Shown here: positions 4,426 to 63,182 of the stretch, piece by piece
Layout: every line of letters begins with the position of its first letter
Position numbering within the stretch: the first letter of the stretch is position 1
NCBI RefSeq assembly: GCF_006345805.1
Contig: NW_021831990.1
Location: 229 to 64,228 of the forward strand
DNA from: Octopus sinensis
Taxonomy: Eukaryota
Direction: 5' to 3'
Length of the DNA stretch: 64,000 bases
The notes under the pieces: model-generated
What the model saw: only the letters and a program-made list of their open reading frames with translations
What the model was told of the DNA's origin: nothing
Database searches by the model: none
Program-made: the position numbers and the translations under genes

Positions 4426-4822
4426 AGAGGCTAAAAAGAACGTCGATACCTCGACGACAGCAGCGACAACAATAGCAACAACAACAACAACAACAGCAAC
4501 AAACGTATAACGAAATTACAATTAACAAAATGCCATGGATCTGGTGAGTGGTGGGGAGATGGAGGGAGTCGGAGCTTAAAATTGAAACAAAGGCGAAAGC
4601 TAAAACAAAAGATAGGTAAGACTATATTAACGGGGTGTAGAGCAGGTGTAAATTAACTTTCAGGTAACAAGATCAGCAAGTTCTCTCACAAAAATTAATT
4701 TTAATTAGGTAATAATAACTAAAGAAGGAGCTTCTATGAATTATTAAGTAAAGTTGGTTTAAAATGATATAATAAATTAAAAATTGGTTATGTGGGATTC
4801 TGAATGGAATAAGTAATTATAT

Positions 4823-5414
4823 ATTCTTTTCTACTCTAGGCACAAGGCCCGAATTTTTGAGGGAAGGGGCCAGTCGATTAGATCGAATCCTGTACGCAAC
4901 CGGTACATAATTTATCGACCCCGAACGGATGAAAAGCAAAGTCGATCTCGCCGAAATTTGAACTTAACTCAGAACATAGCGGCAGACGAAATACCTATTT
5001 CTTTACTACCCACAAGGGGCTAAACACAGAGAGGACAAACAAAGACAGACAAACGGATTAAGTCGATTATATCGACCCCAGTGCGTAACTGGTACTTATT
5101 TAATCGACCCCGAAAGGATGAAAGGCGAAGTCGACCTCGGCGGAATTTGAACTCAACTCAGAACATAAAGACAGACGAAATACCTATTTCTTTACTACCA
5201 TTAAGGGGCTAAACACAGAGAGGACAAACAAAGACAGACAAACAGATTAAGTCGATTACATCGATCCCAGTGCCTAACTGGTACTTATTTAATCGACCCC
5301 GGAAGGATAAAAGCAAAGTCAACCTCGGAGGAATTTGAACTCAGAACGTAACGGCAGACGAAATACCGTTAAGAATATCGTCCGGCGTGGTAACGTTTCT
5401 GCCAGATCGCCGTC
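4823..5414 (-). mobile_element. SINE family A trimer (tail-B host + two tail-A units)
   Basis: ~190-bp units joined as ...cagacgaaatacc|tatttctttactacccacaagggg at 4995/4996 and 5184/5185. Confidence 0.88.
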
Positions 5415-5434
5415 TTAGTACGTGTGTTAATAAT

Positions 5435-5652
5435 CTTCTCTTCTCTAGGCACAAAGTCCGAAATTTTAGGGGAGGGGGCTAGTCGATTAGATTGATTCCA
5501 ATACGCAACTGGTACCTAATTTATCAAATCTAAAAGGATGAAAAGCAAAGTCGACCTCGGTGGAATTTGAACTCAACTCAGAACGTAAAGACAGGCGAAA
5601 TACCGCCAAGAATTTCGCCCGGCGTGCTAACGTTTCGGACAGCTCGCCGCCT
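5435..5652 (-). mobile_element. SINE family A monomer, tail B
   Basis: Same head and body with a ctctaggcacaaag...ggggaggg tail. Confidence 0.82.
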
Positions 5653-5835
5653 TCATTATTTATATATTATACAGAATTGGTGCAGTTTTGGCTGCGGTTA
5701 AGGAGGTCGCTTGGCAATCATGTTGTTTTGGGTTCAGTGTCTAATGCACTGCACCTTAAGCAAGTATCTTCTCCTGTAGCCCTGGACCGACCAATGACTT
5801 GTGAGTGAATTTGCGAGACTGAAAGAAGCCCGTTG

Positions 5836-11688: not shown

Positions 11689-12162
11689 GAGGGGGAGAGA
11701 GACAGAAAGGGAGAGAGCTAGAGACTACGCACACAAGCTGCACCTGAGCAACTTGACCTTCGAACTGGCTTTATTAGCGCCTTATTTTCTGCTCATTATC
11801 TGACTTCAGTAAGATATTTGTATTAATTTGTATTTCATTACCTTTGTTCATTTGATTATTTATGGCCCAGGTCGTACTCCAAGCATTCCGAAAACAAGCT
11901 TCTTTCGCATTTTAAAACCCTTACTCTCGTAAACAAATTGATAATATATATTTCTTATATTAACAAGGAGAATAACTCTGCTTTACATTGTAAAAAACAA
12001 ATACTATCCGGTTGAACAAAAGAATCACCTGTAGATTTAGATTAGATTCCCCAATCCTGACAGCTAGATTCTTCTAAATTGATTACGGCGGTATTAGAAG
12101 TTAGAATTTAAAAACTAAGCAGTAGTGATGATGTACCGAAAATACGTATTTAATTCATTGAA

Positions 12163-12391
12163 GGCGGCGAGCTGGCAGAATCGTTAGGACGCGGGGCAAA
12201 ATGCGTAGCCGTATTTCGTCTGCGGTTACGTTCTGAGTTCAAATTCCGTCGAGGTCGACTTTGCCTTTCATCCTTTTGGGGTCGATAAATTAAGTACCAG
12301 TTACGCACTGGGGTTGATGTAATCGACTTAATCCGTTTGTCTGTCCTTGTTTGTTCCCTCTGTGTTTAGCCCCTTGTGATCAATAAAGAAA
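12163..12391 (+). mobile_element. SINE family A monomer, tail A, 13-bp TSD
   Basis: tRNA-like head GGCGGCGAGCTGGCAGAA...GAGTTCAAATTCC. TSD tatttaattcatt at 12147-12159 and 12392-12404. Confidence 0.9.
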
Positions 12392-13204
12392 TATTTAATT
12401 CATTTCAAACTCTTTAAATTTCTATCGAAGGTAGTCATTTATAATATGCGATTTCATCCTTATTTCAAATTGTCAGGACAGCATTACCCAAGACAAAAAG
12501 AAAATTAAACTAAATTTAAAATTTTACGAAGCGAGACATTACTTAGAGATGGAAAATAATTTCAATATGGAAGACACTCATGGAATGTGTTTTATTTTTC
12601 CTTCATCGTTAATGTTTCAGCAATTTAGAGAGAAGAGAGAGAGAGATTTGCCTGTTTCCCTGTTTCTATACTATTCCATTAATAATGAATTTAATTCCTT
12701 ATTCCTATATCATTAATGATTATTTCTAATTTTGGGAAAACGCCAATAATTTTCAGGGAGGAGCAAGTTGATTACATCGATACCAGAACTTAATTCCATC
12801 TTTCTCTCTCCCCCCTTTTCTCTCTCTCTTTCTCCCTCTCTCTCTGTACTCTCTCTCTCTCTCACTCACTCTCTCTCTCTATCAATTTATCTATCTCCCT
12901 ACACCTCTGTCGCTGCTTCACTTTGTTCACACTAACGGGACATTTAATCATTATTCATTCCACTATAACTGAATTTTATCCCGTATTGCAATATTTATTC
13001 TATTGTTACTGAATTTTAATTTCAAAATAGAGATCAAAAAGTCGACAGAAGTGCATGGAATCTTCTTTTATTTAATCTATATACTTTTCTTTCAAATCAC
13101 CTGGTGCTCTACTTCCTGCTTATCCATCCATGAAAGACAAAAAGTGTACCAGTAATTTAGTATTTCAATCTTGAGTATTATGGGTCAGTACTCATGGAAT
13201 TGTC

Positions 13205-23070: not shown

Positions 23071-23429
23071 TATATGGACGCACGTATGCATGAATGCATT
23101 TTTGATGTATGGTTGTGCGAACGTTTATATGCATGTATGTATGGCATGCACATATCTATGTATAGATCCACATATCTATGTATGGCATGCAAATATCTGT
23201 GTATGGCATGCACATATCTTTGTATACATACATATTACTATGTATAGCGGGCACGCCCGTATTTACGCACCTACATATGTATGCATGTATGCATGAATGC
23301 ATATATGAATGTACGCATGTATGCATGCACATATGTATGTATGCATCTATATATGCATCCGGATATTGGGCCCTGGTACGAGAGTTCCAGGGTCTTGGGA
23401 CTATGGACAATATTAGTCAATATTCGTTT

Positions 23430-23820
23430 CTACTCTAGACACGAGGCCCTGAATTTTGAGGGAGGGGGAGCTAGTTGATTAGATCGACCACAGTACACAA
23501 CTGGTACTTAATTTATCGAGACCGAAAGAATGAAAGGCAAAGTTGACCTCGGCAGAATTTGAATTCAGAACGTGGCGGCAGACGAAATACCTATTTATTT
23601 ATTGCCCACAAGGGGCTAAACACAGAGAGGACAAACAAGGACAGACAAACGGGTTAAGTCGATTATATCGACCCCAGTGCGTAACTGGTAGTTAATTTAT
23701 CGACTCCGAAAGGATGAAAGACAAAGTCGACCTCGGCGGAATTTGAACTCAGAACGTAACGGCAGACGAAATACCGCTAAGCATTTCGCCCAGCGTTCTA
23801 ACGTTTCTGCCAGTTCGCCA
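23430..23820 (-). mobile_element. SINE family A dimer (tail-A unit inside a tail-B host)
   Basis: Junction gaaatacc|tattt at 23591/23592. Confidence 0.88.
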
Positions 23821-25867: not shown

Positions 25868-26133
25868 CTTCGACTTTTTAAAATCAAATTTGAAACACCA
25901 TAAATTATGCTACAAATATCTTGAATCGCAGCAGGTAGGGAAACATGGAGAATTACGATTTGGTGCGCTGTTAATATTTTTTACTTGACAGAGCTAAACA
26001 CATTGAATTGCAATGACAACTTCGTAAAAATGAGATTAATATCAATAGATTTGCAAGAGCTTCTCATTCCTTCTTTAAATGTTCTTTACGCACAAAAGTA
26101 TGCGTGTTTCATGCTGGTATAAGATCGCACCAA

Positions 26134-26528
26134 GGCGGCGAGCTGGCAGAAACGCTAGCACGCCGGGCGAAATGTCGCTACGTTCTGAGTTCAAATTCCG
26201 CCGAGGTCGACTTTGCCTTTCATCTTTTCGGGGTCGATTAAATAAGTACCAGTTACGCACTGGGGTCGATATAATCGACGTAATCTTTTTGTCTGTCCTT
26301 GTTTGTCTCCTCTGTGTTTAGCCCCTTGTGGGTAGTAAAGAAATGGGTATTTCGTCTGCAGCTACGTTCTGAGTTCAAATTCCGCCGAGGTCGACTTTGC
26401 CTTTCATCCTTTCGGGGTCGATTAAATAAGTGCCAGTACGCGTTGGGGTCGATATATTCGACTTAATCCGTCTGTCTGTCCTTGTTTGTCTCCTCTGTGT
26501 TTAAACCCTTGTGGGTAGTAAAGAAATA
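26134..26528 (+). mobile_element. SINE family A dimer with 17-bp TSD
   Basis: TSD ggtataagatcgcacca at 26116-26132 and 26529-26545. Internal junction aaagaaatg|ggtatttcg at 26346. Confidence 0.92.
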
Positions 26529-27191
26529 GGTATAAGATCGCACCATCGTTGTGAACTATTAGACTTTGATTCTGGGAAACCAGTTCCAATGAAACGCGTC
26601 TAAAGGATCCGGCAAATAACGCGGAGGATTGAAGCAATACTTGGATAGTTATAATAAACAAGCAGAAAATGGAGTCAACGGTACAATGAGATTGGTGCTG
26701 TATCTGTGACGAGCTCTTCAAACGCCTTTCAGGGCTCAAAAGTTATTGAAGATCTCACGCTGGGAAAGAGCAATTGCAGGTAAAAGAAGAGGTTAAGCTC
26801 GGCAAGAAGCAGACAGTGACAATGTGTTGTATGTATGTATGTGTGTGTGTCTGTGAGTGTGCATGTGTAACATGTGTGTAAGTATTTAGGGACTTGTGGT
26901 ATGTCTATGCGCTTGTGTATATTTAACTGCGTATTTGTACGCATATATAGGTAAATATATTACAAAATTAGTCTCGGCCAGAAATTTTAATTTGCACCTC
27001 ATGGTTTATTTAACGGTTGAATGAGCCGTCAGTCGAAACTTAAAGACTTTTTAAAAGAAAATTATAATAAGATCTATAATAAATATTGAATCTTCTCATC
27101 AGTAGGCGTTCTGCTATTCACAGAATTGCTTTCAAATAACTTTAAATAAACATTTACATAAGTAAATATGCGCGTGCGTGACTCTGTGTGC

Positions 27192-30694: not shown

Positions 30695-31075
30695 TTGTCT
30701 CTTGCTCTCTTACTCTTTTTCTTTTTCTCTTGTTCTCTTAGTCTTTTCCCTGTCTCTTACGCTCTTAGCTTTTTTCTTTTTCTCTTGCTCTCTTACTCCT
30801 TTTCTTTCTCTCTTGTTCTCTTAGTCTTTTTCCTTGTCTCTTAAACTCTTAGCCTTTTTCTTTTTCTCTTGCTCTTTTACTCCTTCTCTTTTTCCCTTTC
30901 TCTCTTACTCCTTTTCCTTGTCTCTTACTCTCTTAGCATTTTTCCTTGTCTCTTAGTCTTTTTCTTTTTCTCTTGCCCTCTTACTGCTTTTCTTTCTCTC
31001 TTGCTCTCTTACTCCTTTTCTTTTTCTCTAGTTCTCTTAGCCTTTTTCTTTTTCTCTTGCTCTCTTAGTCATTTT
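30695..31075. repeat. ~28-bp pyrimidine-rich minisatellite
   Basis: Alternating tcttgctctcttactcc.. and tcttgttctcttagtc.. units. Confidence 0.8.
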
Positions 31076-31712
31076 CCTTTGCTTGTCTAAAGCATACAAC
31101 GCTAAGCTTTAATTTCTCTTGTTTCTCTAATTGCTATATTTATTTTCGCTGTACGTAAACTTTATATTGTTGTTGTTTCACTTTGTATTTCTACGCTTTT
31201 TGGCCACGTTTTTTGTTTATCTGACTCCACGTATTCTTTGCTTGTCTTCTCACTTCCTGAATTTTGTTTTATTTGTGGAAGTTATTCATATATTTATGCG
31301 TGTGTTTATGTATGTACGAATATGCATGTATTAGCCATCGGCTACATTTTGGTTTATCCAGTAACTACATGGAATCCTGGGTTTTGCTAAGCACCGTATT
31401 TTGCTAAGCAGCCTACATTTCTAATATGAGATATTTGACAACAAAATATTGGAGGAAATATGATTTTCCGATTGATGAACGCAAACGTACTTTATTCTGA
31501 CATTGCACGACGTTTTAGCCTTATATTAGTGTTGGATAAGAGAAGTTACTCTTACATACCGGTAAGTTAAGGGGATGTAAACGAACCAACACTGACTATA
31601 AAGCAGTGGAGGAGACAACACAAACACAGACACACACACATGCACACTTACATACTTATATATATATATATGAGAGATTGTGTGTGTGTGTGTGTGTGTG
31701 TGTTGTGTGTGT

Positions 31713-41300: not shown

Positions 41301-41779
41301 CCTTCTGTTTCTGTCTCTACCCACGTAGTCTACATGCGTGTCCAAGGTAGCATTCCAATCCCCCACTAAGAGTAAAGGACGAGACGTTCCCAAGAATACT
41401 TCTAGACGTCGAAAGAAATCCGCCCGACCTGTTAAGGGCGGTGCGTAGACTGATACGAGTCGAAAAGCGCACCCATTGCTGCCGTCAACATCCAGAACGA
41501 TCAGTCTACCCTCCGGGTCTACGAATATCGTCTTGACTTCGAGATCCAGGCTCTTGTGAAAAAGTACCGCGGTGCCACTACCGCCCATCCTCGGCAGACA
41601 GGGAGCGAAATAAATGTTAAACTGTCCGCCAAACATGGACTTTAGGGCCCGTGGCTCGTGGAGTCTGGTCTCACTTATGGCTATGATTCCCAAATCATGT
41701 GACTTGATGTCATTTAGGAGGTATCCTTGTTTCCAAGGAGACCCCAAGCACGCGCATTCACACAACCAATCTTGACCAT
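38345..41779 (-). pseudogene. ORF2: APE endonuclease + reverse transcriptase + C-terminal zinc finger, broken by frameshifts
   Basis: APE motifs MVKIGCVNAR, ISETRL, LLVGDWNA, SYLDRILC, YTDHKLV. RT motifs NFRPITLLNADLKIL, LDQSKAFDRVDH, VRQGCPLS, YADDV, LGVWFG. Zinc finger CPRCGQSDETALHAIVQC. Pieces are spread over track ORFs 40896-41765, 40628-40966, 40288-40707, 40082-40474, 39897-40118, 39524-39808 and 38995-39522. Confidence 0.92.
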
Positions 41780-41829
41780 GATTCTATTGGGGTGTGTGCT
41801 TTAAAACACACAAATGAAAGTACAGAGAG

Positions 41830-43922
41830 TTACTTACTTGTGTCGAAAGTTTTGGCTTCCTCGTTCTTTGATGTGTCTTCGAGGAGGTTTCTATATAGTT
41901 TTTGGGACAGATATTTCTGGAAACCCCCTACAGCATTTGGGAAGAGGCTTTGAGTTTGTGGTGTTTGTTTGTGTGATGTGTAGTATTTTGATGTGTTTGG
42001 GTGGTGTAGTGCGTGGATGATTGCTATTTTTAAAGTCATCTTCACAAATGTTTGTGTATCCTGTGATGTACTCCATTAGTTTGGAGTCTTTTGTGTCTAT
42101 CGCTGATAGCATTGTTTTTGTGGTGTTGGTGCTTGTTTTGTTGTGTATGGAGTTTTCAGGGTTCAGGTATCTCCCTGCTTTGGTTGCGATTTCTTGTTTG
42201 GTTTTTCTTGATCTTTTTCTTTTACCCCCTGTGGCTATTTGCCATTCTGTCGAACTTTCATCGTTAGATGAAAAGTCTGACGAATCAGCAGGGGGCAAGG
42301 GTAAAGCGTCTGGGTGTGTTTGTGCGGTTGTAGATATTGTTGTGGTGCGCGGGGAGGTGTTGCTGGGGGGTTGTTGTGGTTATTGTCTCTCCTACATCCT
42401 TGGTGCTTGTCTTCTTCGTTGTTATTCTTGGTGTTGGAATTGGTTTATTTGTTGTTGGTGGTGATGATTCTGTTCTTGGCGCTGGTGTTGGTGTTGTTTG
42501 GTTGGGTTGGCTTGTTCTTTGTTGTTTTTCCTGCATTTCCGCATACAGCTTCTTGACTAGCTGTCCATATGTGGTGTGGGCAATAATCCTGGCTTTTGTG
42601 ATTTTTCCTGTGGCTGTTGTTGTTGTTGTAATTTTGCGGCAGATTTGCACTCCTTTTTGAGGTGTGCCTCACTGCCACATGTATAGCATCGTGGCCTTCT
42701 GCCCTCGACTACTACGTATAACTTGCGGCCATCCTCAAGATGTACGTGGGTGGGGATTTTATTTATGTCCTCTTGACTTATGTGGAAGAGGAACTCTATT
42801 CTCTTTCCCAGCCAGTCCTTGTTTTCCGAAACACCGATATCTAGGATGTTTATGTCCTCCATTTCGGATGTTAAGGCGGATGTAATCCACAGTGTTGTAG
42901 TCACTTGGGGGACACCACTGATAATGACTTTCGTCACCTTCTGGCCGAGGTAACTCGGTGTCAACGTTAGTTCATCAGAATGAAGGGTTATCGTTGAGAA
43001 TTTCTTCGCCAACTCTTCATTCTGAAAAACCACCTGTACGTGTGCGAACTTGTTCGCCCAAGTCACACAATCCTTGTATCCCCAGATGGGGCGTAAGCAC
43101 TTTTCGACTTTGTCTGTGCTTGCCTTTTCTGGACTTTTTGTTTTTTTATTTGTGATTTTATATACAATTGTCTTTTTTTTCTCCTCATTCAGTATGTGCT
43201 GAGGTATGTGTAAGAGTATTTTTCCGTTTTGATTTGTAATAAGGTTTCTGCAATCTTTAATCTGTTGTGTAGTAAACGAAACTTTTGTTACCTTTTCTTT
43301 TATCGCCTCGGCGAAGTTTGTTGTTGTTTTGTTATTGTTGTTACTGCCGGTGGTGTTGGTGTTGATGGCAGGGGTGTGGGTTGTAGGTTTGTGGTTGCTG
43401 ATTATGCAACTAGCAAGGGGTGGAAAATTGCCTGCGTAATTTAGTCCTGCATTAGCGCAAATTCGGCATTTCGTTTGCTTGTCGTCGTTATTTTTTCACT
43501 TGTTGGTGATGGAGTGAGCAGTGGTTGAAGGGAATTGTTGTTGTCGTCGTCGTTGTTGTTGTTGTTGTTGTTGTTGTTATTGTGTCGTTCTTGGTGACGG
43601 CGGTGGTGTTAGTAGTATTAGTAGCATTGACGGCACGGTCTTTGGTGGCGGTGATGTTGGTATTGTTATTGGTGGCGACGTCTTTAGTAGGGATAGCAGT
43701 TTTAGTAGCAGATTCTGCCATGTTGTTGTTGTCGGTGTTGGTGGTGGTGGTGGACTCACTGATGGTGTTGACGGTGCTTGGCCTTGCGACCTTTGTTTTG
43801 TATTTGTTGCTGTTGATGGTGGTGGAGTTGTCAGGTTCGGCGTATGCTAACAGAGCATCCTGTTTTTCTGTTTGTGCGTCACGCTTGACTTGCACCTCAG
43901 CCTCGTGGTGACCAGTGGCCAT
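41830..43922 (-). pseudogene. ORF1: gag-like protein with one CX2CX4HX4C knuckle and Thr/Asn-rich low-complexity arms, frameshifted
   Basis: Track ORF 42557-43066 has RCYTCGSEAHLKKEC preceded by an RRM-like stretch (HVQVVFQNEELAKKF...VIISGVP). Flanking T/N/Q-rich frames are 43488-43952, 42285-42650 and 41891-42298. The start at 43922 (MATGHHE) is inferred. Confidence 0.78.
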
Positions 43923-46750: not shown

Positions 46751-47317
46751 GCATAGTTTGTATGTGCGTCACCTCCTGAAAGCACTCTAGCATTTATCAA
46801 TTTAAAATTATAATTTAAATAATCTACTGCAAAAAAGAAAATAAACTTTAATCTAAATAATATTTGTTTGGTTAAATTCACAGCCGTTGATGAGTCAGAT
46901 TAGTAATTTTATGTTAGTTTCAAATAATTACAAGGCAAATATGAAGAGACAACAAAGTACTCTGTTAAAGAAATATCTCATTGTGGTTGATCACACGTGA
47001 TCATCATTGAGGTTAATTAACGTTTAGATCATTACTGTAATTATTTTCTAGTTTTAATTGACAACAGTATATTAACCAGAACTAAAAAATAAATTTGATG
47101 GAATATCAGAATCGAGTTAAACATTTAGAAACGAAGAGATAATTAGATGTTAATGAAGATAAAATCTGAAAGAGTAGGCGGAGTTAAAAAGAGTGTCAGT
47201 GGGAGGAGCTATAAATGAGTTGCTGAAGTGACATGCGTAATAGTACATTGTTTTATGTGAAAGAATGTGAAATACCTATAGGAACTGACATACACTAACT
47301 ATATAAATCACATATAA

Positions 47318-47548
47318 GGCTGCGAGCTGGCAGACACGTTAGCGCGCCGGGCGAAATGCTTAGCTGTATTTCGTCTGTCGTTACGCTCTGAGTTCAAATT
47401 CCGCCGAGGTCGACTTTGCCTTTCATCCTTTTGGGGTCGATAAATAAAGTACCAGTTTCGCACTGGAGTCGATGTAATCGACTTAATCCGTTTGTCTGTC
47501 CTTGTTTGTCCCCTCTATGTTTATCCCCTTGTAGGCAATAAAGAAATA
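47318..47548 (+). mobile_element. SINE family A monomer, tail A, 17-bp TSD (1 mismatch)
   Basis: tatataaatcacatata at 47300-47316 versus tatatgaatcacatata at 47549-47565. Confidence 0.88.
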
Positions 47549-49925: not shown

Positions 49926-50580
49926 GATTTTTTTTTGAAATTATATAATGAAATTATATAAAACCTTGTTTCTGCTTGCTCATAACACAATGCCTCATAC
50001 ATACTCTAATCTTGACAAAGATTTTTTAATGTGCCTAAAATATAAATGTAAATTTAAATATTTTATTCATAACATAAATGGCGTTCACATCTAAACACCA
50101 AACGCCATCGTAGCGCCCCTTTGAGTGCTTACAACGCTGTCAAGGGGACGAAACCGGCCAGATTTAAGAACCAATATTCCAGATGCTTCAACAGATTTAG
50201 AAAACAACCTGGAATTCATAACTAGACCGTTGTTATTGCTATTTGACCCTAGGCTATTAATGATCGAGCAGCCCTATGATCAAGACCTTTCCAGTTTTGA
50301 CTAACCTGGATTTTATTGGACCTATGCTTCTATGACTATATTATCGAATATAGCTTGCGTGTTTTTAAAAAAAGTAGGGTACGAATAGTGGATATTTGGT
50401 TGCTATTTCTAATAGATGGAACGGCTATCTAGAGGATCCTTCGCTACTCATCATTATTCGAGTGATGGGGTGAAGGTCTGTAATAAAATAATCTGGTAGG
50501 ATTAATGCATCTCTTTGATTAAAATGCCACTGCATGGAGGGCTTCAGAAGAAATGCGTTGCAATATTTATTCCAACTAAG

Positions 50581-50745
50581 GCGGCGAGCTGACAGAAACG
50601 TTAGCACACCGGGCAAAATGCGTAGCCGTATTTCATCTGCCGCTACGTTCTGAGTTCCAATTCCGCCGAGGTCGACCTTACCTTTCATCCTTTCGGGGTC
50701 GATAAATTAAGTACCAGTTACGCACTGGGGTCGATATAATCGACG
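50581..50745 (+). mobile_element. SINE family A, tail missing
   Basis: Head and body match the family. It ends after ggggtcgatataatcgac. Confidence 0.82.
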
Positions 50746-50799: not shown

Positions 50800-52800
50800 T
50801 GGGTCTGTTTTTAATGAATTCTTGAACGTATTATTTTTAATATTTGCGTGTGTTATTCTAATGTGGTAGTGGATATGTCATTTGTTGTGGATGCGTCCAA
50901 AAGAGGTCTGTATTTAGTGATAAAGAGAGACTCTTTACTAATTCGTTGGCGAAAGGTTGTATCGTCCCTGAATTGATAGAGGGGTAAAATTCTGAAGCTT
51001 GGATTTTTGCTATTGGCGCAAATGTCGATGTGTTGGCTGAAGGCTATTTTTCTGTCTTTTTTTTTATTATTTTGATTTGGGATCTGTGCAGAGCGATCCT
51101 TTGACGCATACTGTTTTGTTTGGTCTATATATTGCTCTTGACACCCAGAGCAGGTTAGTGCGTATATCAGGTTCTCCGACGCACATGTGAAGCTAATTTT
51201 CACTGTGAAACGTTGTTCCTGTTCGAAGGAGAACTCTGATCCCTCAATTAAACTGATGCATATCCCACAGTTGGGTCTTCCGCATTTTTTTACTGACGCC
51301 TTCAGTGTTGTTGTTGAGCGTATTTGGACTTGTGTTAGGAGGTTTTCATAGATTTGGGCTGTCTCTGACTTTTTATGATAGTGTGTGTTTGGAGGATTAA
51401 ATTCATTCTGTGGTCCTTTGTTTAGCAGGGGAATGTTTTGAAGGATGGTGTCGAAGGCTTTATTGTTAAGAGGGTTGTGTGTGAAGATGTATGGTAGGGC
51501 TTTTGGTTGTGAATCCTTCTTTAATTTGAGATGCCTGAGTTCGTGGACGTTGAGTTGTAGGGCCTGTTGAAAGCATAAGTCAATTAATGAAGATAAGTAG
51601 TTCCTGGTGATGGGTATATCCTTTAATTCATGTAGTCGTGTGTCCCTGGTGCTTGCATTAGAAACTGTAGTACATATCCTTTTTGCTAGGTTGGAGATAT
51701 TCATTCTGGTGTGTCTGGGATGGCATGAATTGAATGGTAGATATTGCTTGGAACCCGTGGGCTTATAGAATATATCTGTTTCTATTACGTTGTTAGATTT
51801 CTTAATGAGGATGTCGAGGAAGGGAAGATGTTGATGGCTATATTCCATCGTGAATTGAATGTTTACGTCAAGTCCATTTATAAGTGCTTGAAATTCTTTA
51901 AGTCTCTCTATACTTTCATGCCAAAGAATGAAACAGTCATCCAGGTATCTCTTCCAGTTATTTTCTATGTAGAAGGAGAATGGGCTGCCGTACTTTTCAA
52001 GAATCTTACGATAAAGACTAATTTCTAGATGTCCCATGACTAGGTTAGCAAAGGAGGGGACCATTCTCCAACCCATCGCAGTCAACGATTTTTGTCGATA
52101 GAAGTTGTCATTGAAGACGAAGTCGTTATTCTCCAAGATAAATTTTAGCCCTTCTATCGCGAATTTTTTTTATGCGATATAGGAGTTCGTTGGCGTGATT
52201 CTCTAGCCAGAATTGAATTGCCTCTATTCCTAGGTTGTGGGGGATATTGGAATAGTGGTTGACTACATCGAAGGATACTTGTAGGGTGTTTTTGTTTATT
52301 GTTTATTGTTTCAGAAGGTGATTGAGCATATCCAGGTCGTCTCTTGTGTAGCTTTTGACATGCTTGAGGAATGGTTTTAAGAGGATATCTATAACGTTAC
52401 GGAGGCGGTGAGTTTCGCATGCGGGACCTGCTTATTATAGGTCTCAATTTGAAGTCATTAGGAGTAGGGACTTTGATTATTTTGTCTGTGGCTATCCTGC
52501 ATGCGTTACTTATTTTCTCACTTTTGTGTATCTTGAGAATACCGTAGAATTGGCTGGTTTTACTTTTGAAATTGGTCATATAGTCATATTCTTTGTCAGT
52601 GAGCCCTTCCCTGTATAGGTTTAACATAGTTATTAAGTGTCTCATAATTTTCTGCTGACTGTAGTGTTAGGCCTTTTCATAATATGCTGTGTCTTCTAAT
52701 ATGGATATTACTAGAGTTATATAATATACCGTATCCATTAAGACAACTGCACTCTCTTATTTAGCCTCTTTGATTATTATTGTTTTGTCATCTTTTAATC
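50800..52800 (-). mobile_element. Penelope-like element: RT + GIY-YIG endonuclease, 5' end interrupted by a mariner fragment
   Basis: 427-aa ORF 50853-52136 has YLDDCFILW, LPFLDILI, TDIFYKPT, SCHPRHT, CGRPNCGIC, FTCASENLIYALTCSGCQEQYIDQT. Upstream frames give LKDDKTIIIKEA, FYGILKIHK...LRPIIS and SFDVVNHYSNIP. Confidence 0.92.
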
Positions 52801-56115: not shown

Positions 56116-56149
56116 ATTAATAACCCATTCTGGTTATAAACACAAAGCC

Positions 56150-56560
56150 TGAAATTTGAGTGGGAAGGGGGAGGTCGATTGCCTTAACCTCAGTGCTCAA
56201 CTGCTACTCATTATATCGACATCGAAAGGATGAAAAGCAAATTCTACCACGACGGAATTTGAACTCAGAGAGTAAAACCAGAAGAAGTATTCTGTCTGAC
56301 CTGCTAACGATTCTGCCAGCTCGCCGCCTTAATGAAAATTATAATGATGGTTTCAAATTTTGGCACAAGGCCAGCAATTTTAAGAAGGATGTTAAGTCGA
56401 TTACTTCGACCCCAGTACTCAACTGGTACTTACTTTACCAACCCGGAAATGATACAAAGTCAAAATCGACCTAGGCAGAATTTGAACTCAGAACGTAAAG
56501 GGGGGAACGAAATGCTGCTGGGCGTTTTTCCCGGTACGGTAAGAATTCTGCCAAATCGAT
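56150..56560 (-). mobile_element. Two diverged SINE family A tail-B copies
   Basis: Two degenerate units with ...aatttgaactcag... and cacaaag/cacaagg tails. Confidence 0.65.
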
Positions 56561-56690
56561 GCCTTCTTCCTTCCCTTTCCTAATACAGGACTGTATATGC
56601 AGTCTGACAGGTTACTTCGGGAGAAATAGCCACATAGCTAAGTAACCGAACACAAAAACACAAAAACAAGGTATGACTATGTGATCATAG

Positions 56691-56916
56691 GGCGGCGAGC
56701 TGGCAGAATCGTTAGCACGCCGGGCGAAATACGTAGCCGTATTTCGTCTGCCGTTACGTTCTGAGTTCAAAATCCGCCGAGGTCGACTTTGCCTTTCATC
56801 CTTTCAGGGTCGATTAAATAAGTACCAGTTACGCGCTGGGGTCGATATAATCGACTTAATCCGTTTATCTGTCCTTATTTATCCTCTCTGTGTTTAACCC
56901 CTTGTGTAAAGAAATA
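56691..56916 (+). mobile_element. SINE family A monomer, tail A, 17-bp TSD
   Basis: TSD gtatgactatgtgatca at 56671-56687 and 56918-56934. Confidence 0.92.
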
Positions 56917-57385
56917 TGTATGACTATGTGATCAACCGTCCTTTCAAGCAACGATTGGCAATTGATGTGATTTAAATTATGAAAAAAAATGTGAATATGG
57001 AAAATATAAATCAACAATATCGATTCACATGAAAGGAAACACGTAACTGTTACTAGATTTAACATGATAAACAGATTTCAAACTGTTATCACCTGATGTT
57101 ATGAAAGCAACTAAATTATAAACATAAATGCAGGTATGGCTAAGTGGTTAAGAAGTTTATTTCCCGACAACGAGATTTCAAGTATCGAAGTAACTTCATG
57201 AATGTTTTTTTTTTTTTTCCGGCAGCCGGACAACGGCCGCCTGAAGGCCGTGTCCGACTCGCTACCTACTTACCGTCTTCAATAAAATAAATTCTTTTGT
57301 TTGAGTCATTTGACTGCTGCCGTGCTGAAGCACCGCCTTAAATGGTTTTTGTAGAAGAAATACACACCCACTCACACACACACAC

Positions 57386-57416
<31 letters not shown>

Positions 57417-57419
57417 TCT

Positions 57420-57721
57420 TTTGTTTCTTCCTTCTCAAGCCATGCCTGGCTCATAAGGGCCGGTTTCCCGGTTTCCTTGGCGTGTAGGTTCCCCACCTGG
57501 ATGGGATGCCGGTTCGTCGCAGGTGAGCTGCAAGATGCAGGAGGAAAGAGTGAGAGAAAGTTGTGGCGAAAGAGTCAGCAGAAGTTCGCCATTACCTTCT
57601 GCCGGAGCCGCGTGGAGCATGGGTGTTTCGCTCATAAACACAAACATCGCCCGGTCTGAGATACGAACCCGCGATCCCCAGACCGCGTGTCCGCTGCTCT
57701 AACCACTAGGCCATGTGCTTC

Positions 57722-57722
<1 letters not shown>
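57420..57722 (-). mobile_element. SINE family C (alternative 3' half)
   Basis: Reverse complement of 8070-8340. A related 3' piece is at 62770-62942 and a partial copy at 61725-61925. Confidence 0.82.
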
Positions 57723-57758
<36 letters not shown>

Positions 57759-57785
57759 GTGTGTGTATGTGTGTGTGTGTATTTG

Positions 57786-58128
57786 AAAGAAGAAAAGAAA
57801 ATGGAGATTAGGAAGTTAATAATTGTTTAGTATTATCAACAAATTGGTCATCTTCACTTACAACCGTTTCAATTATACTCAATCAACATTAAATTTACAT
57901 TTATATGACATGAGCACAATATCATCAGAGAAAAGAAGATGTGCATTTGGATGTTATATGTATGTTTATGAATTCATTTTAGTAAACTGATGATATTATC
58001 CTCATGTCACATAAATGTAAATTTAATGTTTATTGAGTATGAATAGAAACGGCTGTAAGTGAAGATAAGCAATCTGTTGTTAAAGAAACAATTATTAACT
58101 TCCTAATTTCCATTTCTTTTCTTCTTTT
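57786..58128. mobile_element. Foldback/MITE-like element with ~140-bp inverted arms
   Basis: Arms 57786-57928 and 57987-58128 are imperfect reverse complements. Set between dinucleotide tracts. Confidence 0.82.
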
Positions 58129-58159
58129 TAAATGAATATAAAATATATCTTTTATTTAT

Positions 58160-58240
<81 letters not shown>

Positions 58241-58333
58241 CTATTATTTTATGGAAATTCATTCCCTCAAAATACTAGGTATTGAACAAGTATTTGCCTG
58301 GATGAAACCATCCCTTCATGAGGTTTACACATG

Positions 58334-58380
<47 letters not shown>

Positions 58381-58404
58381 TGCGCGTATCAAAAATTATA
58401 TATA

Positions 58405-58636
58405 TATTTCTTTATTGCGCACAAGTGGCTAAACATAGAGGGGACAAACAAGGACAGACAACCGGATTAAGTCTATTACATCGACCCCAGTGCGTAACTG
58501 GTACTTAATTTATCGACCCCGAAAGGATGAAAGGCAAAGTCGACCTCGGCGGAATTTGAACTCAGAACGTAGCGGCAGACGAAACATGGTTACGCATTTC
58601 ACCCGGCATGCTAACGTTTCTGCCAGCTCGCCGCCT
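58405..58636 (-). mobile_element. SINE family A monomer, tail A
   Basis: Flanked by tatcaaaaa(a)ttatatata on both sides. Confidence 0.88.
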
Positions 58637-59443
58637 TATCAAAAAATTATATATAATTAATACTACAAACGGCATTCAGTTATAATGGAAAAAAGTATTA
58701 TCACATGATTTTTCATATTCGGTTTTTCTTTTTCAAATTTGTTGTTTAATAAGACTTACCTGTCTAGTATGGGGGCTGGCCATAAGAAGGAAATCGTCAC
58801 GTACTCGGGAGGAATCCGTCACGCTCTCCAAGATACCAGTGAATAATATTGAATGGATCTTTAAAAAAAAAACTGAAGACTCAAAAAATTATGATTGCTA
58901 TAATTAAGAAGTAATGATAATATAATACAATACATTATTTCTTACAACTCTTAGTCCACATATACTGGTTAACCTTTAGAAATAATTCTTTTTTCTCTTC
59001 GTTTTTGTTTTAATTTTCCTCTTTTAATCTTTCATTTAATTTCGTTACTTCTCTGCTTCTCTCTATGTTTAATCACCGCACTCTATATTTATACCCATTA
59101 GCTTATCTATATCTATTTCCCTCCTTATCTATCTACATATCTATCGATATGTGTAAGTCAATATTTCCATTCATTTCATTTATTTACATCAACCGATTTA
59201 AAAACATGTTTTTTAAGTGTTTCTATCAGACTGGTGTAAACATCCGTAAACGAAAAGGTTAAACTTCGCTTCAATAAATTTCGTTTCGATTTCTGGTTAA
59301 ACAATTTTATCCATTTCCCATCACTAATGTGGTTGACGCTATTTGTGTTTATCGTAATACCAGCACCAAAGAACTGTCTAACTACAGTTCAAAGATAAAA
59401 CAAATACGGACTGTATCGAATCATAGGTTCTAATAGAGTCGGT

Positions 59444-59859
59444 GTATCTTTTCGGTTTGAACGGCAGTTTTTTCTAGCGGTGTCATATGAAATTGTCACC
59501 CATAATTATGACCCTAGTATCGATCTATTGCATTTCAATCTGCTTTAGGGTTAGGGTTAGGGGTGGGGGAAGGGTATCTTTTTTTCTTCACAAATTTAAA
59601 TAAACCCAATCTGTTTCTTAAACGAGGGACATATTCATACGGCACAGAATGTTATTTACCTCAATGGACGTCAGTGATTGGTTGAAATTGCAGAAATTGA
59701 AGAAAAAAAACAACAAATATCTTACAAACTATAGAATTTTCTCAATAAAGCCAAGAGAAAAAGATGTTTTATAAACACATTCTACCAGTATACGAAGTTT
59801 AAAATTTTTTAGTTACCTAGAAATTATGTTAAAAACTGCCGTTCAAACCGGAAAGATCC
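59444..59859. mobile_element. MITE with 28-bp TIRs and 8-bp TSD (Merlin- or hAT-like)
   Basis: Left gtatcttttcggtttgaacggcagtttt, right aaaactgccgttcaaaccggaaagatcc. TSD gagtcggt at 59436-59443 and 59860-59867. Confidence 0.85.
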
Positions 59860-60177
59860 GAGTCGGTTACCCGTTTTCCATAGCGTATAAGTGGTAGAGA
59901 TCACAGCATAACCCCAAAACAGGACTCCACCACGTTGGAGGTTTACTCTTTTACAGCTAAATGGTGGCCTGGAATAAAGTGAAATAGTGATTTGCTAAAT
60001 AACACAACCCACTGCCCAATCAAAGAACAATTTTGCAATCGTGATTGTACCACACTAACCACTGGGTCATACTCCTTCAAATTTCAAAGAATACCTAAAG
60101 AATAATTATCAAGAATGGTATTACCATAATCCTTACCCAACCTAATCCTAAGTCTCCGTCCACTAGACACAAATAAT

Positions 60178-60751
60178 CCTTTCTACTGGAAGCACAAGGC
60201 TTCAATTTTGGAGGAAGGTATTAAGTTGATTACATTGACCCCAGTGCGTAAGTGGTACTTATTTAATCGACCCCGGAAGGATGAAAGGCAAAGTCGACCT
60301 CGGCGGAATTTGAACTCGGAACGTAGCGGCAGACGAAATACCTATTACTTTACTACCCACAAGGGGTTAAACACAGAGAGGACAAACAAGGGCAGACAAA
60401 TGGATTAAGTCGATTATATCCACCCCAGTGCATAACTGGTACTTATTTAATCGACCCCGATAGGATGAAAGACAAAGTCGACCTCGGCAGAATTTGAACT
60501 CAGAACGTAGCGGCAGACGAAATACCTATTTCTTTACTACCCACAAGTGGCTAAACACAGAGAGAACAAACAAGGACAGACAAAGTTTTTAAGTCGATTA
60601 TATCGACCCCTGTGCATAACTGGTACTTAATTTACCGACCATGGAAGGCAAAGTCGACCTCGGCGGAATTTGAACTCAGAGCGTAACGGCAGACGAAATA
60701 CTGCTAAGCATTTCGCCCGGCGTGCTAACGTGTCTGCCAGCTCGCTGCCTT
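60178..60751 (-). mobile_element. SINE family A trimer inside one 17-bp TSD pair
   Basis: Junctions at 60342/60343 and 60526/60527. TSD cactagacacaa(a/c)taat at 60161-60177 and 60752-60768. Confidence 0.9.
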
Positions 60752-61054
60752 CACTAGACACAACTAATATCGGTGCAACACTTGATTTAACTGGGCCCCT
60801 GTTTTAGTCGATCCTACTTTACTAATCCCAGAAGAATAAAAGTCGAAGTCTACTGATGCTTCATCGATTTCGCTTAACCAGTTGCCTAATGTTGCTTTCA
60901 AATTCTTGGCACAAGACAGCAAGTTCGGTGGAGGGGATGAATCGTTTACATCGACCCCAGTACTGAATTGGTACTTATTTTATCGACACTTGACCTTGTA
61001 GTAATAACGACTCTAATAGCTCGCGGCCTTCTCCTGCTATTAATAATTGGTTTC

Positions 61055-61258
61055 ATATTTTGGCACAAGGCCAGTAAGTTCGGTGATAAATCGATTACAT
61101 CGACCCAAGTGTTCAGGTGGTGCTTATTTTATCAAGCCCGAAGGGATTAAATGCAAAGTCGACCACGGCGGAATTTGAACTCAGAACGTATAGACAGACG
61201 AAATGCCGCGCTACGCATTTTACCCGGCGTGCTCACGATTCTGCCAGCTCGCCGCCTT
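61055..61258 (-). mobile_element. SINE family A tail-B variant
   Basis: Family head and body with a tttggcacaaggccag tail. Confidence 0.78.
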
Positions 61259-62092
61259 CTCTCCTATAATTAATAATAAATGATTTTGAATGTATTTTGT
61301 CTTTGAAATTAATCCCTTATAATATGACCAAAAAGAAAAATGATAAAATATCGACCTAAAAATGTCAATATTTAATTCCCTTTCTAAATTATAAGTTCAA
61401 TCCCCGCAGGAATCCACTTTGCTTTCCGTTCTTCACAAAAATCAATAGAACTAAGCGTCCTCAAGAAATAACATCGATTTCAATCAACTCTGTCCTTCTC
61501 TGAGAAAAAAAAAACCTTAGCGCATTCTACTGATACCAGAAATCCTTATTACTGAAAATCTCTTGGATTGAGATGGGAAGTGAGCGGCAGGGTTATAAAA
61601 AGGTTCTCGTTCCCTAGTTGAGTGCGATTTAGTTGACGTTTTCGTCCTGCAATATCCTTTCATATCTGTAATAAATCATAGGACTTAAGCCTGTCGGTGA
61701 AACTTTCACCTCTGATGAAAGCGCATGGCTTAGTGGTTAGTATATACGGCTCGCGGTTGTGAGGCTGTGAGCTTTACTTCCGGCGGTGCATTTTGTTCTT
61801 GAGCAAGACATTTTATTTCACACTTCTCCAGTCTATTCAGCTGGCAAAAATGAGTTGTACCTGTAATTCAAAGTGCCAGCCTTGTCACACTCTGTGTCAC
61901 ACTGAATCTCCCTGAGAACTGCGTTAAAGACACTGTTTCTTTATTAGCCACAAGGGCCCAAAATCGAGGGGGACAAACAAGGACAGACAGGACACTACAG
62001 AGGGGACAATACATAAAACGAATATGACTGAGATGATTATATAACAATGAGGTTATGAATGGCTGCATGCGCCCCTCATCACAAGCAGTACC

Positions 62093-62324
62093 TATTTCTT
62101 TACTACCCACAAGGGGCTAAACATAGAGGGGATAAACATGGACAGACAAACGGATTAAGTCGATTATATCAACCCCAGTGCGTAACTGGTACTTAATTTA
62201 TCGTCCCCGAAAGGATGAAAGGCAAAGTCGACCTCAGCGGAATTTGAACTCACAACGTAACGGCAGCCGAAATACCGCTAAGCATTTCGCCCGCCGTGCT
62301 AACGATTCTACCAGCTCGCCGCCT
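62093..62324 (-). mobile_element. SINE family A monomer, tail A, 19-bp TSD
   Basis: TSD cctcatcacaagcagtacc at 62074-62092 and 62326-62344. Confidence 0.92.
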
Positions 62325-63182
62325 TCCTCATCACAAGCAGTACCATTAATCTGTTTCTTTTACAGTCCATTTTTATCATGTATTTACGTAACAATTAATT
62401 ATCATATTACATACCATTGCAAGTATTTGAACCGTTATATACATTCTCTACAATTGTTCTATTTTTCAATATTTTTTTAAACATAACATAAAACACTTTA
62501 CTCTTTCTTTTTTCCTCTTTTCTCCTTTTTCTTTTTTTCCTGTCAATTTAACATACTTATTTTCTTTTTACTAGTCCTTCATCAATGGTTCAATTCCTAC
62601 TAAATCCACTACTGGTGGCAATTCTTTGAATTCCACCCTTTCTCCTGGTGGGTCAATACTATCTCCACACATTTCTTCCAGTTTCTTGTAATTTTCCTTT
62701 TCGATCACTATCGCCTTCATATCCTCTGCATATATGCATGATGGTACTTTCACTCTTACTATTTGATTAAATTTCTGCTGACTGACTCTTTCGCCACAAC
62801 TTTCTCTCACTCTTTCCTCCTGCATCTGGCAGCTCACCTGTGACGGACCGGCGATCCCGTCCAGATAGAGAACCTATACGCCAATGGAACTGGGAAAACG
62901 GCACCTTATGAGCCTGGGATGGCTCGAGAAGGAACAGACAATTAAATGGCGAGCAAACAGTATCGTTAGCACGTTAGAAAATGCTGTGCGGCATTTTTTC
63001 CAGCTCTTTACTGACGAGGGCAACTTTGCTCCCCTTTACTCCAGGCCTACTTCAGACCTAAATGGTGATGAAAGGACTTTGACGAACCTAGCTAATCAAT
63101 TGAATGACCTAATGATTAATCAAACAAAAACAATCGATTAGTTAACTGATTAAATGGTCAACCAATTAACAAATGAAAATAA

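What the first reader, a model, noticed from the sequence alone, without database searches (positions are those of the whole stretch)
60161..60768. SINE arrays that appear to grow by inserting into their own internal GGTAT site
Seen: six junctions at four loci (4995, 5184, 23591, 26346, 60342, 60526) fuse tail A (AAAGAAATA/G) to the same internal position GGTATTTCGTCTG, about 45 nt downstream of the head. In three loci the outermost unit has a different tail (B), so tail-A units sit inside a tail-B host. One TSD pair encloses the whole 60178-60751 trimer. GGTAT matches the genomic target starts of tail-A copies. Inference: the endonuclease cuts a target carried by the SINE itself, and homologous pairing of the cDNA rebuilds a seamless head, giving self-amplifying tandem arrays. 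The junction GAAATA-GG-TATTTC is also palindromic.
Basis: partly seen in the sequence, partly recalled or inferred. Interest (0 to 1): 0.75.

Follow-up and report, generated by a model that had tools for sequence, protein, structure and literature searches.

The report
Seamless tandem SINE arrays in octopus-like DNA
A short mobile element in what looks like an octopus-type genome often sits in head-to-tail arrays of 2-3 units, always joined at the tip of its own hairpin; self-insertion is the likeliest cause but is not proven by this window.

Summary
All six junctions lie exactly at the stated coordinates. Each joins the complete 3' end of tail A to the same internal base, nt 50 of the SINE. 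One 12-17 bp TSD pair encloses the whole 60173-60751 trimer, and a 17-bp pair encloses the 26133-26528 dimer.

New findings:
- Nt 50 is the first base of the 3' arm of a conserved 13-bp hairpin. This explains the palindromic junction.
- Three of six ordinary tail-A insertions start their TSD with GGTA (chance about 1e-4).
- The 'tail-B hosts' are chimeras: tail-A-type for their first 20-125 nt.
- Unit b2 looks like an unequal-exchange product.
- No solo copy starts at nt 50.

The mechanism is unresolved with 64 kb:
- repeated insertion into the SINE's own GGTAT site, resolved by homology: about 0.4;
- a multi-unit master copied as a whole, with RT copy-choice: about 0.27;
- a template jump at the hairpin tip within one event: about 0.13;
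- unequal exchange alone: about 0.07.

No further copies of this SINE subfamily could be fetched; only one diverged relative turned up. Tandem SINE multimers are already known in clams, rodents, bats and squamates. This is therefore a new variant, not a new kind.

The parts
60752..60763 (-). 5' copy of the TSD of the trimer (TTGTGTCTAGTG; 17 bp with one mismatch if ATTA[G/T] is included)
   Evidence: Exact 12-mer present only here and at 60161-60172; flanks read.
60527..60751 (-). Unit k1: full head (nt 1-49), core and complete tail A
   Evidence: model positions 1-215. Shares head variant GACACG and core variant ACGCTC with monomer f.
60690..60719 (-). Head hairpin of k1: 13-bp stem with a 4-nt loop. 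The position homologous to the array junctions is the first base of the 3' arm.
   Evidence: Fold of the consensus. Hairpin alone -16 to -17 kcal/mol, z -3.6 to -4.1. 90.9% of cells paired against 38-55% when slid; apex pair U:G/G:C covaries.
60343..60526 (-). Unit k2: starts at GGTATTTCG (nt 50) and ends with complete tail A
   Evidence: model positions 50-215.
60173..60342 (-). Unit k3: starts at nt 50, has an A-type core to about +125, then a B-like tail (CCTTCCTCCAAAATTGAAGCCTTGTGCTTCCAGTAGAAAGGA)
60161..60172 (-). 3' copy of the TSD of the trimer
4821..5416 (-). Array b (A, A, B), junction G at 5184 and 4995. Unit b2 is chimeric: its 5' part is like b3 (5-bp GAGTT duplication, TATG) and its 3' part is like b1 (private TGTCTTTG).
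5425..5658 (-). b0: full-length tail-B monomer 12 bp upstream of array b, same orientation
23419..23818 (-). Array d (A, B), junction G at 23591. Unit d2 is A-type to at least +60 and B-type from about +100. A B-tail-like sequence abuts the head.
26133..26528 (+). Array e (A, A), junction G at 26346, enclosed by the 17-bp TSD GGTATAAGATCGCACCA (26116-26132 and 26529-26545). Unit e1 has a 19-nt deletion that removes the hairpin tip.
62093..62325 (-). Monomer m with tail A; 19-bp TSD GGTACTGCTTGTGATGAGG
56688..56917 (+). Monomer i with tail A; TSD GTATGACTATGTGATCA, in pre-insertion context GGTATGAC
12159..12393 (+). Monomer c with tail A; TSD (TA)TTTAATTCATT
47316..47548 (+). Monomer f with tail A; TSD TATATAAATCACATAT with one mismatch
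58405..58637 (-). Monomer j with tail A; TSD TATATATAATTTTT(T)GATA

Best explanation
These are multimers of a tRNA-like SINE, probably of the CORE type, in what looks like an octopod genome. An array consists of head nt 1-49 followed by n copies of a ~185-nt unit. Each unit runs from nt 50 to the natural 3' end of tail A. The last unit may end in a different (B-type) tail.

Most likely mechanism:
1. The machinery that mobilises tail-A RNA prefers to start reverse transcription on DNA nicked just 5' of GGTA(T).
2. The SINE carries the best such site at the tip of its own 13-bp head hairpin (..TTAGC|GGTATTTCG..).
3. A tail-A RNA is copied from a nick at that site in a resident copy of the same orientation.
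4. The resident's upstream strand is fully homologous to the new cDNA, so it anneals in register and primes second-strand synthesis. No extra head and no visible internal TSD remain.
5. The resident's own TSD now bounds the array.
6. Arrays then change further by unequal exchange (unit b2), and possibly by being copied as whole units.

Shown: the junction anatomy, the hairpin, the TSDs, the GGTA target bias, and mosaic units.

Inferred: nicking at the hairpin tip, homology-based 5' resolution, and the order of events in time.
For: - Six of six junctions use the complete tail-A end and nt 50.
- Only tail-A units ever sit upstream of a junction. There is no tail-B|nt-50 junction, although B-type elements are about as common.
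- Independent genomic tail-A insertions start their TSDs with GGTAT, GGTAT and GGTAC in 3 of 6 cases (P about 1e-4).
- All post-junction units have GG at nt 50-51. Four of the six head-bearing tail-A-type monomers (c, g, i, j) have CCGTAT or CCATGT there, and none of them is followed by an inserted unit.
- All four arrays begin with a full head, and no solo copy starts at nt 50.
- One TSD pair bounds arrays k and e.
- The sequence flanking the junction differs within 15 nt in two of six junctions (d1 has a GGCAAT-type tail; b2 has GTCTTTA). This argues for more than one origin.
- Re-use of SINE boundaries as targets is directly visible at l1/l2. There an 18-bp TSD copy (15/18 identical) lies between l1's tail and l2's head.
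- Published precedent for tandem TEs made by repeated insertion: PMC5932611.
Against: - GGTATTT occurs 17 times in the window, 10 of them SINE-internal. Yet all six perfect-site events are in SINEs, and none of the six genomic insertions used a perfect site. A short motif is therefore not enough. Hairpin structure, a longer motif or RNA-DNA homology must be added.
- The three B-tailed last units are A-type for their first 20-125 nt, not pure hosts.
- Four of six junctions share the haplotype GGGTAGT..ATA|GG..GCCGC.
- The GGGTAGT tail type goes with GGTA targets in 7 of 7 cases, against 1 of 4 for the GGCAAT type. This fits RNA that reads through an existing junction.
- k1 keeps a head-core linkage seen in monomer f.
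- Arrays k and d contain no T4 run, so they could be transcribed and copied as whole units.
- Unit ages could not be compared: all units are 2-9% from consensus.
Confidence: 0.4

Rival explanations
1. Multi-unit master. The tail-A|nt-50 junction arose once or a few times and is inherited. Arrays lack a pol III terminator, so they are transcribed end to end and retrotransposed as whole units bounded by one TSD. RT copy-choice between homologous SINE RNAs, or homology-primed copying of a read-through RNA at a nick in a resident SINE, swaps 3' tails and changes unit number.
For: - The junction is invariant.
- The flanking haplotype is shared in 4 of 6 junctions. C at +17 occurs in 5 of 6 post-junction units against 3 of 10 head-bearing units.
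- All three B-tailed last units are A/B chimeras with different switch points (+20, +60-100, +125).
- There is no T4 run in arrays k and d or in the consensus.
- TSDs enclose arrays k and e.
- The GGGTAGT tail type is linked to GGTA targets. That is expected if the template RNA carries GGUA just 3' of the tail.
- The literature leaves the same question open for B2 and Dip multimers (PMC8466645).
Against: - Four arrays show four architectures with different subfamily make-up. k1 and k2 differ at several diagnostic sites (11.6%).
- Two junctions have non-haplotype flanks within 15 nt.
- It needs a separate event to make the first junction.
- It does not by itself explain the GGTA bias at non-SINE targets.
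Confidence: 0.27
2. Single-event concatenation. During one target-primed reverse transcription, the RT (or a second tail-A RNP) leaves the first SINE RNA at the tip of the head hairpin. It resumes at the 3' end of a tail-A RNA, once or twice, and finishes on a full head.
For: - The exit point is a structural landmark, the first base of the 3' arm of a -16 kcal/mol hairpin.
- One TSD bounds each array.
- The head-core linkage of k1 with monomer f fits a complete RNA copy.
- No targeting of genomic SINEs is needed to explain why arrays are so frequent.
- RT template switching is the mechanism usually invoked for mosaic SINEs (PMC4758252).
Against: - There is no donor with the common CCGTAT apex (0 of 6).
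- There is no tail-B acceptor (0 of 6), although three arrays would have started on a B tail.
- B-tailed donors should be pure B up to nt 50, but they are A-type there.
- The match with GGTA at ordinary genomic targets would be a coincidence, unless the RT selects primers ending in ..TACC.
- RTs usually pause at the base of a hairpin, not at its tip.
- No solo copy is truncated at nt 50.
Confidence: 0.13
3. Local DNA duplication only. Arrays arise through unequal exchange or slippage between the internal GGTAT and a GGTAT at the start of the 3' flank, and later grow by unequal crossing-over.
For: - Array e is followed by GGTATAAG, so a 5-nt microhomology sits exactly where it is needed.
- e1 and e2 share a private CTCC variant. 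b1 and b2 share TGTCTTTG. b2 and b3 share the GAGTT duplication and TATG.
- b2 has the structure expected from a crossover between b1 and b3.
- Unequal recombination is the explanation offered for SINE arrays in clams and squamates (PMC11481361, PMC10702118).
Against: - It cannot create the A|B-type junctions of k, b and d, whose 3' flanks do not start with GGTAT.
- k1 and k2 belong to different subfamilies.
- Within-array distances (7.8, 7.8 and 11.6%) are no smaller than between random copies (mean 10.4%). They sit at or above the upper bound from TSD divergence (3 mismatches in about 117 bp).
Confidence: 0.07

Closest known systems
TSD1-(SINE)n-TSD1 arrays of HCD tRNA-SINEs in the blood clam Scapharca broughtonii (Martelossi et al. 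2024, PMC11481361)
   Same: Both have one TSD pair around the whole array. The first unit has a complete head, and the inner and last units lack the same 5' part of the head. Both are in a mollusc.
   Different: In the clam the inner units also have truncated 3' tails and belong to one family, and the authors attribute them to unequal recombination. Here every inner unit has a complete natural tail-A end, units come from different subfamilies, and the last unit can carry another tail.
Head-to-tail multimers of B2, Dip and Ves SINEs in rodents and bats (Vassetzky et al. 2021, PMC8466645)
   Same: A large share of copies sits in same-orientation multimers: 40% for B2, 49% for Dip and 11.5% for Ves. 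The authors state they cannot tell insertion into another SINE from retrotransposition of multimeric templates.
   Different: Those multimers join full-length elements at A-rich tails. Here the join is tail-to-internal, at a fixed base in a hairpin, and it is seamless.
Tandem TE dimers by double insertion; R1 arrays (McGurk and Barbash 2018, PMC5932611)
   Same: Target preference makes tandem copies. Tail-to-internal junctions are typical of non-LTR elements, and dimers can expand by unequal exchange.
   Different: Those junctions keep a TSD copy between the units, or have variable 5' truncation points. Here there is no intervening TSD and one invariant internal point. The l1/l2 pair in this window does fit the double-insertion pattern.
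SINE-derived satellites in squamates (Vassetzky et al. 2023, PMC10702118)
   Same: Tandem repeats are built from part of a SINE, with ordinary SINE sequence at the ends.
   Different: Those are longer, homogenising arrays whose repeat boundaries are unrelated to the element's 3' end.
Dimeric or trimeric SINEs copied as a unit (Alu; tRNA dimers and trimers cited in PMC4758252)
   Same: A fixed internal junction is inherited by all copies, and one TSD bounds the composite.
   Different: Those families have one stable architecture. Here four arrays show four architectures.
Octopus OR2 / CORE-SINE superfamily (Ohshima and Okada 1994, cited in PMC4758252)
   Same: A tRNA-like head followed by a conserved core. 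From memory, the segment TTTCATCC..GGGGTCGATAAA.TAAGTACC resembles the CORE/MIR core.
   Different: Membership was not tested, because no repeat library was available. No tandem arrays are mentioned in what I could read.

Membership tests
LINE-mobilised tRNA-type SINE | Short, non-coding, many dispersed copies | tested here: met
   About 25 units or fragments of 60-235 nt in 64 kb.
LINE-mobilised tRNA-type SINE | Variable target-site duplications flanking individual copies | tested here: met
   Exact or near-exact TSDs of 12-19 bp for c, e, f, i, j, k and m.
LINE-mobilised tRNA-type SINE | tRNA-derived head with pol III A and B boxes | tested here: inconclusive
   B-box-like GAGTTCAAATTCC and a D-arm-like GCTGGCAGAAACGTTAGC are visible. 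ARAGORN finds no tRNA, and Rfam gives no tRNA hit in 56600-62400 even at E up to 10.
LINE-mobilised tRNA-type SINE | 3' tail shared with a partner LINE | tested here: inconclusive
   The LINE remnant at 38.9-43.1 kb has no similarity to tail A or B. A tail-A-only fragment at 61933-61989 may be a 5'-truncated copy or a LINE end.
CORE-SINE superfamily | Conserved CORE domain | not testable with these tools
   No Repbase, Dfam or SINEBase sequences are on hand. The resemblance is recalled from memory only.
   Six of six junctions end ..AAA[GT][AT]AAT[AG], as monomers do.
   TSDs start GGTAT, GGTAT and GGTAC in 3 of 6 non-SINE insertions. P(at least 2 of 6 GGTA) = 9e-5.
   Units b3, d2 and k3 carry the A-type GCCGC at +13..+17. 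All seven other non-A elements have the TCTTTAC-type state. Caveat: a host must carry GGTAT, which is mostly an A-type feature.
   No second genome or population data could be reached. Divergences are uninformative.
Composite SINE retrotransposed as a unit | One TSD pair around the whole multimer | tested here: met
   Arrays k and e. Arrays b and d are unclear.
Composite SINE retrotransposed as a unit | No pol III terminator inside the multimer | tested here: met
   No T4 run in arrays k and d or in the consensus. Arrays b and e have mutational T4 runs.
Composite SINE retrotransposed as a unit | The same architecture and unit-specific diagnostic mutations at different loci | tested here: inconclusive
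   Four arrays show four architectures. However, 4 of 6 junctions share the flanking haplotype. The sample is too small.
Tandem array made by unequal exchange (satellite-like) | Neighbouring units are each other's closest relatives | tested here: inconclusive
   Private shared variants occur in b1/b2, b2/b3 and e1/e2 but not in k1/k2. Distances are 7.8, 7.8 and 11.6% against a mean of 10.4%.
Double insertion at one target (TSD-SINE-TSD-SINE-TSD) | A TSD copy lies between the units | tested here: not met
   None at the six junctions. It is present at the separate pair l1/l2.

The most novel reading that the evidence does not exclude
The tip of the SINE's own head hairpin is the preferred landing site of the machinery that mobilises tail-A RNA. 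Recognition could be by structure, by a long motif, or by pairing with read-through RNA. The family would then be both passenger and landing pad. Each hit adds a seamless unit and a new copy of the site. The result is a retrotransposon form of homing that seeds tandem arrays and shuffles tails between SINE families.
Probability: 0.3. Interest if true: 0.7.

Novelty: new variant of a known kind. Interest (0 to 1): 0.5.

Why it matters
Same-orientation SINE multimers make up 10-50% of copies in several animal genomes. Published work says outright that their origin is unknown: insertion into another SINE, or copying of multimeric templates (PMC8466645).

This family has features that make the question testable:
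- the junction lies at a fixed base in a conserved hairpin;
- the inner units always carry one tail type;
- the outer unit can carry another tail;
- the whole array is TSD-bounded.

Orthologous loci in sister octopus genomes, or long-read population data, would show directly whether units are added one at a time at resident copies or whether arrays move as blocks.

If units are added one at a time, this would be a clear case of a SINE carrying its mobiliser's target. That would give a simple route from dispersed repeat to tandem repeat. If arrays move as blocks, this is an ordinary composite SINE with frequent template switching.

Tried and rejected
Attempts to get more copies of the family all failed:
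- Exact 23-mer scans of metagenome, GTDB-genome and viral contigs returned 0 hits.
- A search with the antisense SINE ORF that spans a junction returned no homologue in 5.8 billion proteins.
- The Penelope-like ORF gave at best 45-50% identity. Named hits were Argonauta hians and Octopus bimaculoides.
- The LINE endonuclease ORF gave two weak hits.
- Of four loci fetched through those proteins, only O. bimaculoides L001 holds one diverged relative of the SINE.
- No paper prints the sequence. The O. vulgaris repeat paper has one small supplementary document (6,437 characters), which I did not open.

Readings rejected:
- Chance or assembly artefact: four loci, diverged units, exact shared breakpoints.
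- Rolling-circle copying of a circular unit RNA, or any 'born identical' model for array k: k1 and k2 differ at several subfamily-diagnostic sites.
- Two insertions into one genomic target: there is no TSD copy between units, and the flanks of k, b and d do not start with GGTAT.
- Insertion of a full-length A element at the 5' end of a truncated B element: no GGTATTTCG copy lies upstream of any array head.
- Recombination through the GAAAT shared by the tail end and the hairpin's 5' arm: it would keep the loop GCTTAGC, which is absent.
- RNA cleavage in the hairpin loop followed by run-off: there are no solo copies starting at nt 50 and no CCGTAT-type donors.

Tests that gave no usable result:
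- tRNA or Rfam identity of the head.
- Dating from divergence: units are 2-9% from consensus, with little CpG decay.
- A candidate TSD around b0-b3 (AATATATAAATA / AATATATAATTA). It overlaps the tail and is AT-rich, so I give it no weight.

Full report
**What the window is.** The window is eukaryotic, AT-rich and full of microsatellites. It holds a degraded LINE and a Penelope-like element. The Penelope-like ORF's best named relatives are from Argonauta hians and Octopus bimaculoides, at only 45-49% identity. One diverged relative of the SINE lies on an O. bimaculoides chromosome. I therefore treat the source as an unidentified octopod-like mollusc.

**The observation.** The finding lies on the - strand.
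- BLAST and a profile search find about 25 units or fragments of one SINE superfamily.
- The profile search cuts all four arrays at model position 50 and finds no solo element that starts there.
- The arrays are k 60751-60173 (tails A, A, B'), b 5416-~4821 (A, A, B), d 23818-~23419 (A, B) and e 26133-26528 (A, A).
- TTGTGTCTAGTG occurs only at the two ends of k. GGTATAAGATCGCACCA occurs only at the two ends of e.
- Every inner unit ends with the same complete tail-A terminus that monomers c, f, i, j and m have just before their TSDs.

**New anatomy.**
- The consensus folds so that CGGGCGAAAUGCU / UAGC / GGUAUUUCGUCUG forms a 13-bp hairpin.
- On its own the hairpin has -16 to -17 kcal/mol, z -3.6 to -4.1.
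- Across 11 heads, 90.9% of cells pair, against 38-55% when the partners are slid. The apex pair switches between U:G (GCTTAGCGG) and G:C (GCGTAGCCG).
- The junction base is the first base of the 3' arm.
- The end of tail A (..GGGUAGUAAAGAAAUA) resembles the 5' arm. Tail plus 3' arm refold into a weaker hairpin (-8.9 kcal/mol).

**Target preference.**
- The six ordinary tail-A insertions have clear TSDs that start GGTATAAG, GGTACTGC, [G]GTATGAC, TATATA, TATATA and TATTTA.
- GGTA has frequency 0.0025 per position in the window, so at least 2 of 6 is expected with P = 9e-5.
- The link between tail-A ends and GGTA(T) is therefore real at sites where inheritance of a junction cannot be the reason.
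- The internal site GGTATTT combines all the observed preferences.

**What does not fit simple self-insertion.**
1. GGTATTT occurs 17 times in the window and 10 are SINE-internal. All six perfect-site events are in SINEs, while the six genomic events all used imperfect sites. A short motif cannot be the whole story.
2. The B-tailed last units are mosaics.
   - They carry the A-type GCCGC at +13..+17.
   - They switch to B-type markers (GAGTT duplication, GCTTTT, GTTG[CT]GTAC, GATCTAATC) at about +20 in b3 and +60-100 in d2. In k3 the switch comes only at the tail.
   - All seven other non-A elements seen have a TCTTTAC-type sequence there.
3. Four of six junctions share one flanking haplotype. 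The GGGTAGT tail type is followed by GGTA in 7 of 7 cases, against 1 of 4 for the GGCAAT type.
4. Unit b2 has the 5' part of b3 (duplication, TATG) and the 3' part of b1 (private TGTCTTTG). This is the product expected from an unequal crossover in an A-B dimer.
5. k1 shares one head variant and one core variant with monomer f, so its head and core look like one RNA copy.
6. Arrays k and d have no T4 run, so they could be transcribed whole.

**What does not fit pure inheritance or a template jump.**
- Four arrays have four architectures. k1 and k2 differ at several diagnostic sites (11.6%).
- Two junctions have different flanks within 15 nt: the GGCAAT tail in d1 and GTCTTTA in b2.
- No junction has a tail-B upstream unit, and none has a CCGTAT-type donor, although both kinds of element are common.
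- No solo copy is truncated at nt 50.
- Within-array distances are not lower than random pairs. They sit at or above the bound from TSD divergence (3 mismatches in about 117 bp). Local duplication alone therefore fails for k, and it cannot make the A|B joins.

**Context in the window.** Same-orientation SINE pairs with short spacers are common: b0-b1, h1-h2, l1-l2, and one pair in O. bimaculoides L001. l1 has its own 18-bp TSD (15/18 identical), and its 3' copy abuts l2's head. Repeated insertion at SINE boundaries therefore does occur here.

**Verdict on mechanism.** I rank the models as follows.
- Insertion of tail-A RNA at the hairpin-tip GGTAT of a resident copy, resolved by homology: about 0.4.
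- A multi-unit master with copy-choice or homology-primed copying: about 0.27.
- A single-event template jump: about 0.13.
- Unequal exchange alone: about 0.07. It does, however, clearly contribute to array b.

The models differ mainly in timing and in what orthologous loci would look like. Neither could be examined.

**Comparison with the literature.** The following are all already described:
- TSD-bounded SINE arrays whose inner units lack part of the head, in a clam (PMC11481361);
- multimers that make up 11-49% of B2, Dip and Ves copies, of undecided origin (PMC8466645);
- SINE-derived satellites (PMC10702118);
- tandem TE dimers made by repeated insertion (PMC5932611).

What appears new is the combination of four features: a complete 3' end, one fixed base at a hairpin tip, a seamless head, and heterologous last units. 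This is a new variant of a known kind.

Noticed in passing
window 61045-61262 and 60880-61035 (- strand): Two B2-type SINEs (l1, l2) lie in tandem. l1 has its own TSD ATTATTAAT[TAT/AGC]AGGAGA (15/18 identical), and the 3' copy abuts l2's head. This is a clear double insertion at a SINE boundary. Similar tail-spacer-head pairs are b0-b1 (12-bp spacer) and h1-h2 at 56130-56566.
   Followed up: partly
L001 15590-15830 (O. bimaculoides CM046609.1, - strand): A diverged relative of the SINE (71-80% identity) has the same hairpin, with a compensated pair (G:C to A:U). A B'-like SINE tail ends about 10 bp upstream of its head. The tail-next-to-head arrangement is therefore not confined to the window's genome.
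   Followed up: partly
window 50853-52136 (- strand), with SINE g at 50578-50744: A 427-aa ORF of a Penelope-like element (reverse-transcriptase C-terminal part plus GIY-YIG nuclease motif). Its best database identity is only about 50%. SINE copy g loses its tail about 100 bp from this element.
   Followed up: partly
window 38995-43066 (- strand): A degraded LINE. It has an ORF1-like ORF with a CCHC knuckle (42557-43066), an apurinic-type endonuclease ORF (40896-41765; best hit 62% identity) and a reverse-transcriptase C-terminal piece (38995-39522). GC content is about 0.50 against 0.30-0.40 around it. It has no similarity to tail A or B.
   Followed up: partly
window 26170-26180 (unit e1): A 19-nt deletion (CTTAGCGGTATTTCGTCTG) removes the loop and 3' arm of the head hairpin. 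It is flanked by TG direct repeats, which suggests the hairpin is prone to deletion.
   Followed up: no
window 61933-61989 (- strand): An isolated 57-nt copy of tail A alone (..CCTTGTTTGTCCCCCTCGATTTTGGGCCCTTGTGGCTAATAAAGAAACA). It is either a strongly 5'-truncated SINE or the 3' end of the unknown partner LINE.
   Followed up: no
window 5560-5570, 5140-5150, 4950-4960 (b0, b2, b3): A 5-bp tandem duplication GAGTT(G/A)GAGTTC, just before the B-box-like motif, is shared by three of the four units of the b cluster and seen nowhere else in the window.
   Followed up: partly
window 13205-13742; 30698-31080; 3983-4430: Minisatellites: a 22-bp unit x 24.5 copies, a 28/84-bp CT-rich unit x 14 copies, and a GA-rich array with 131-bp higher-order periodicity.
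   Followed up: no
window 57709-57798 and 58323-58392: Rfam 'miRNA' matches (mir-3149, mir-1277 and others, all far below their gathering scores) fall on (CA)n(TA)n(TG)n microsatellite palindromes. They are composition artefacts.
   Followed up: yes
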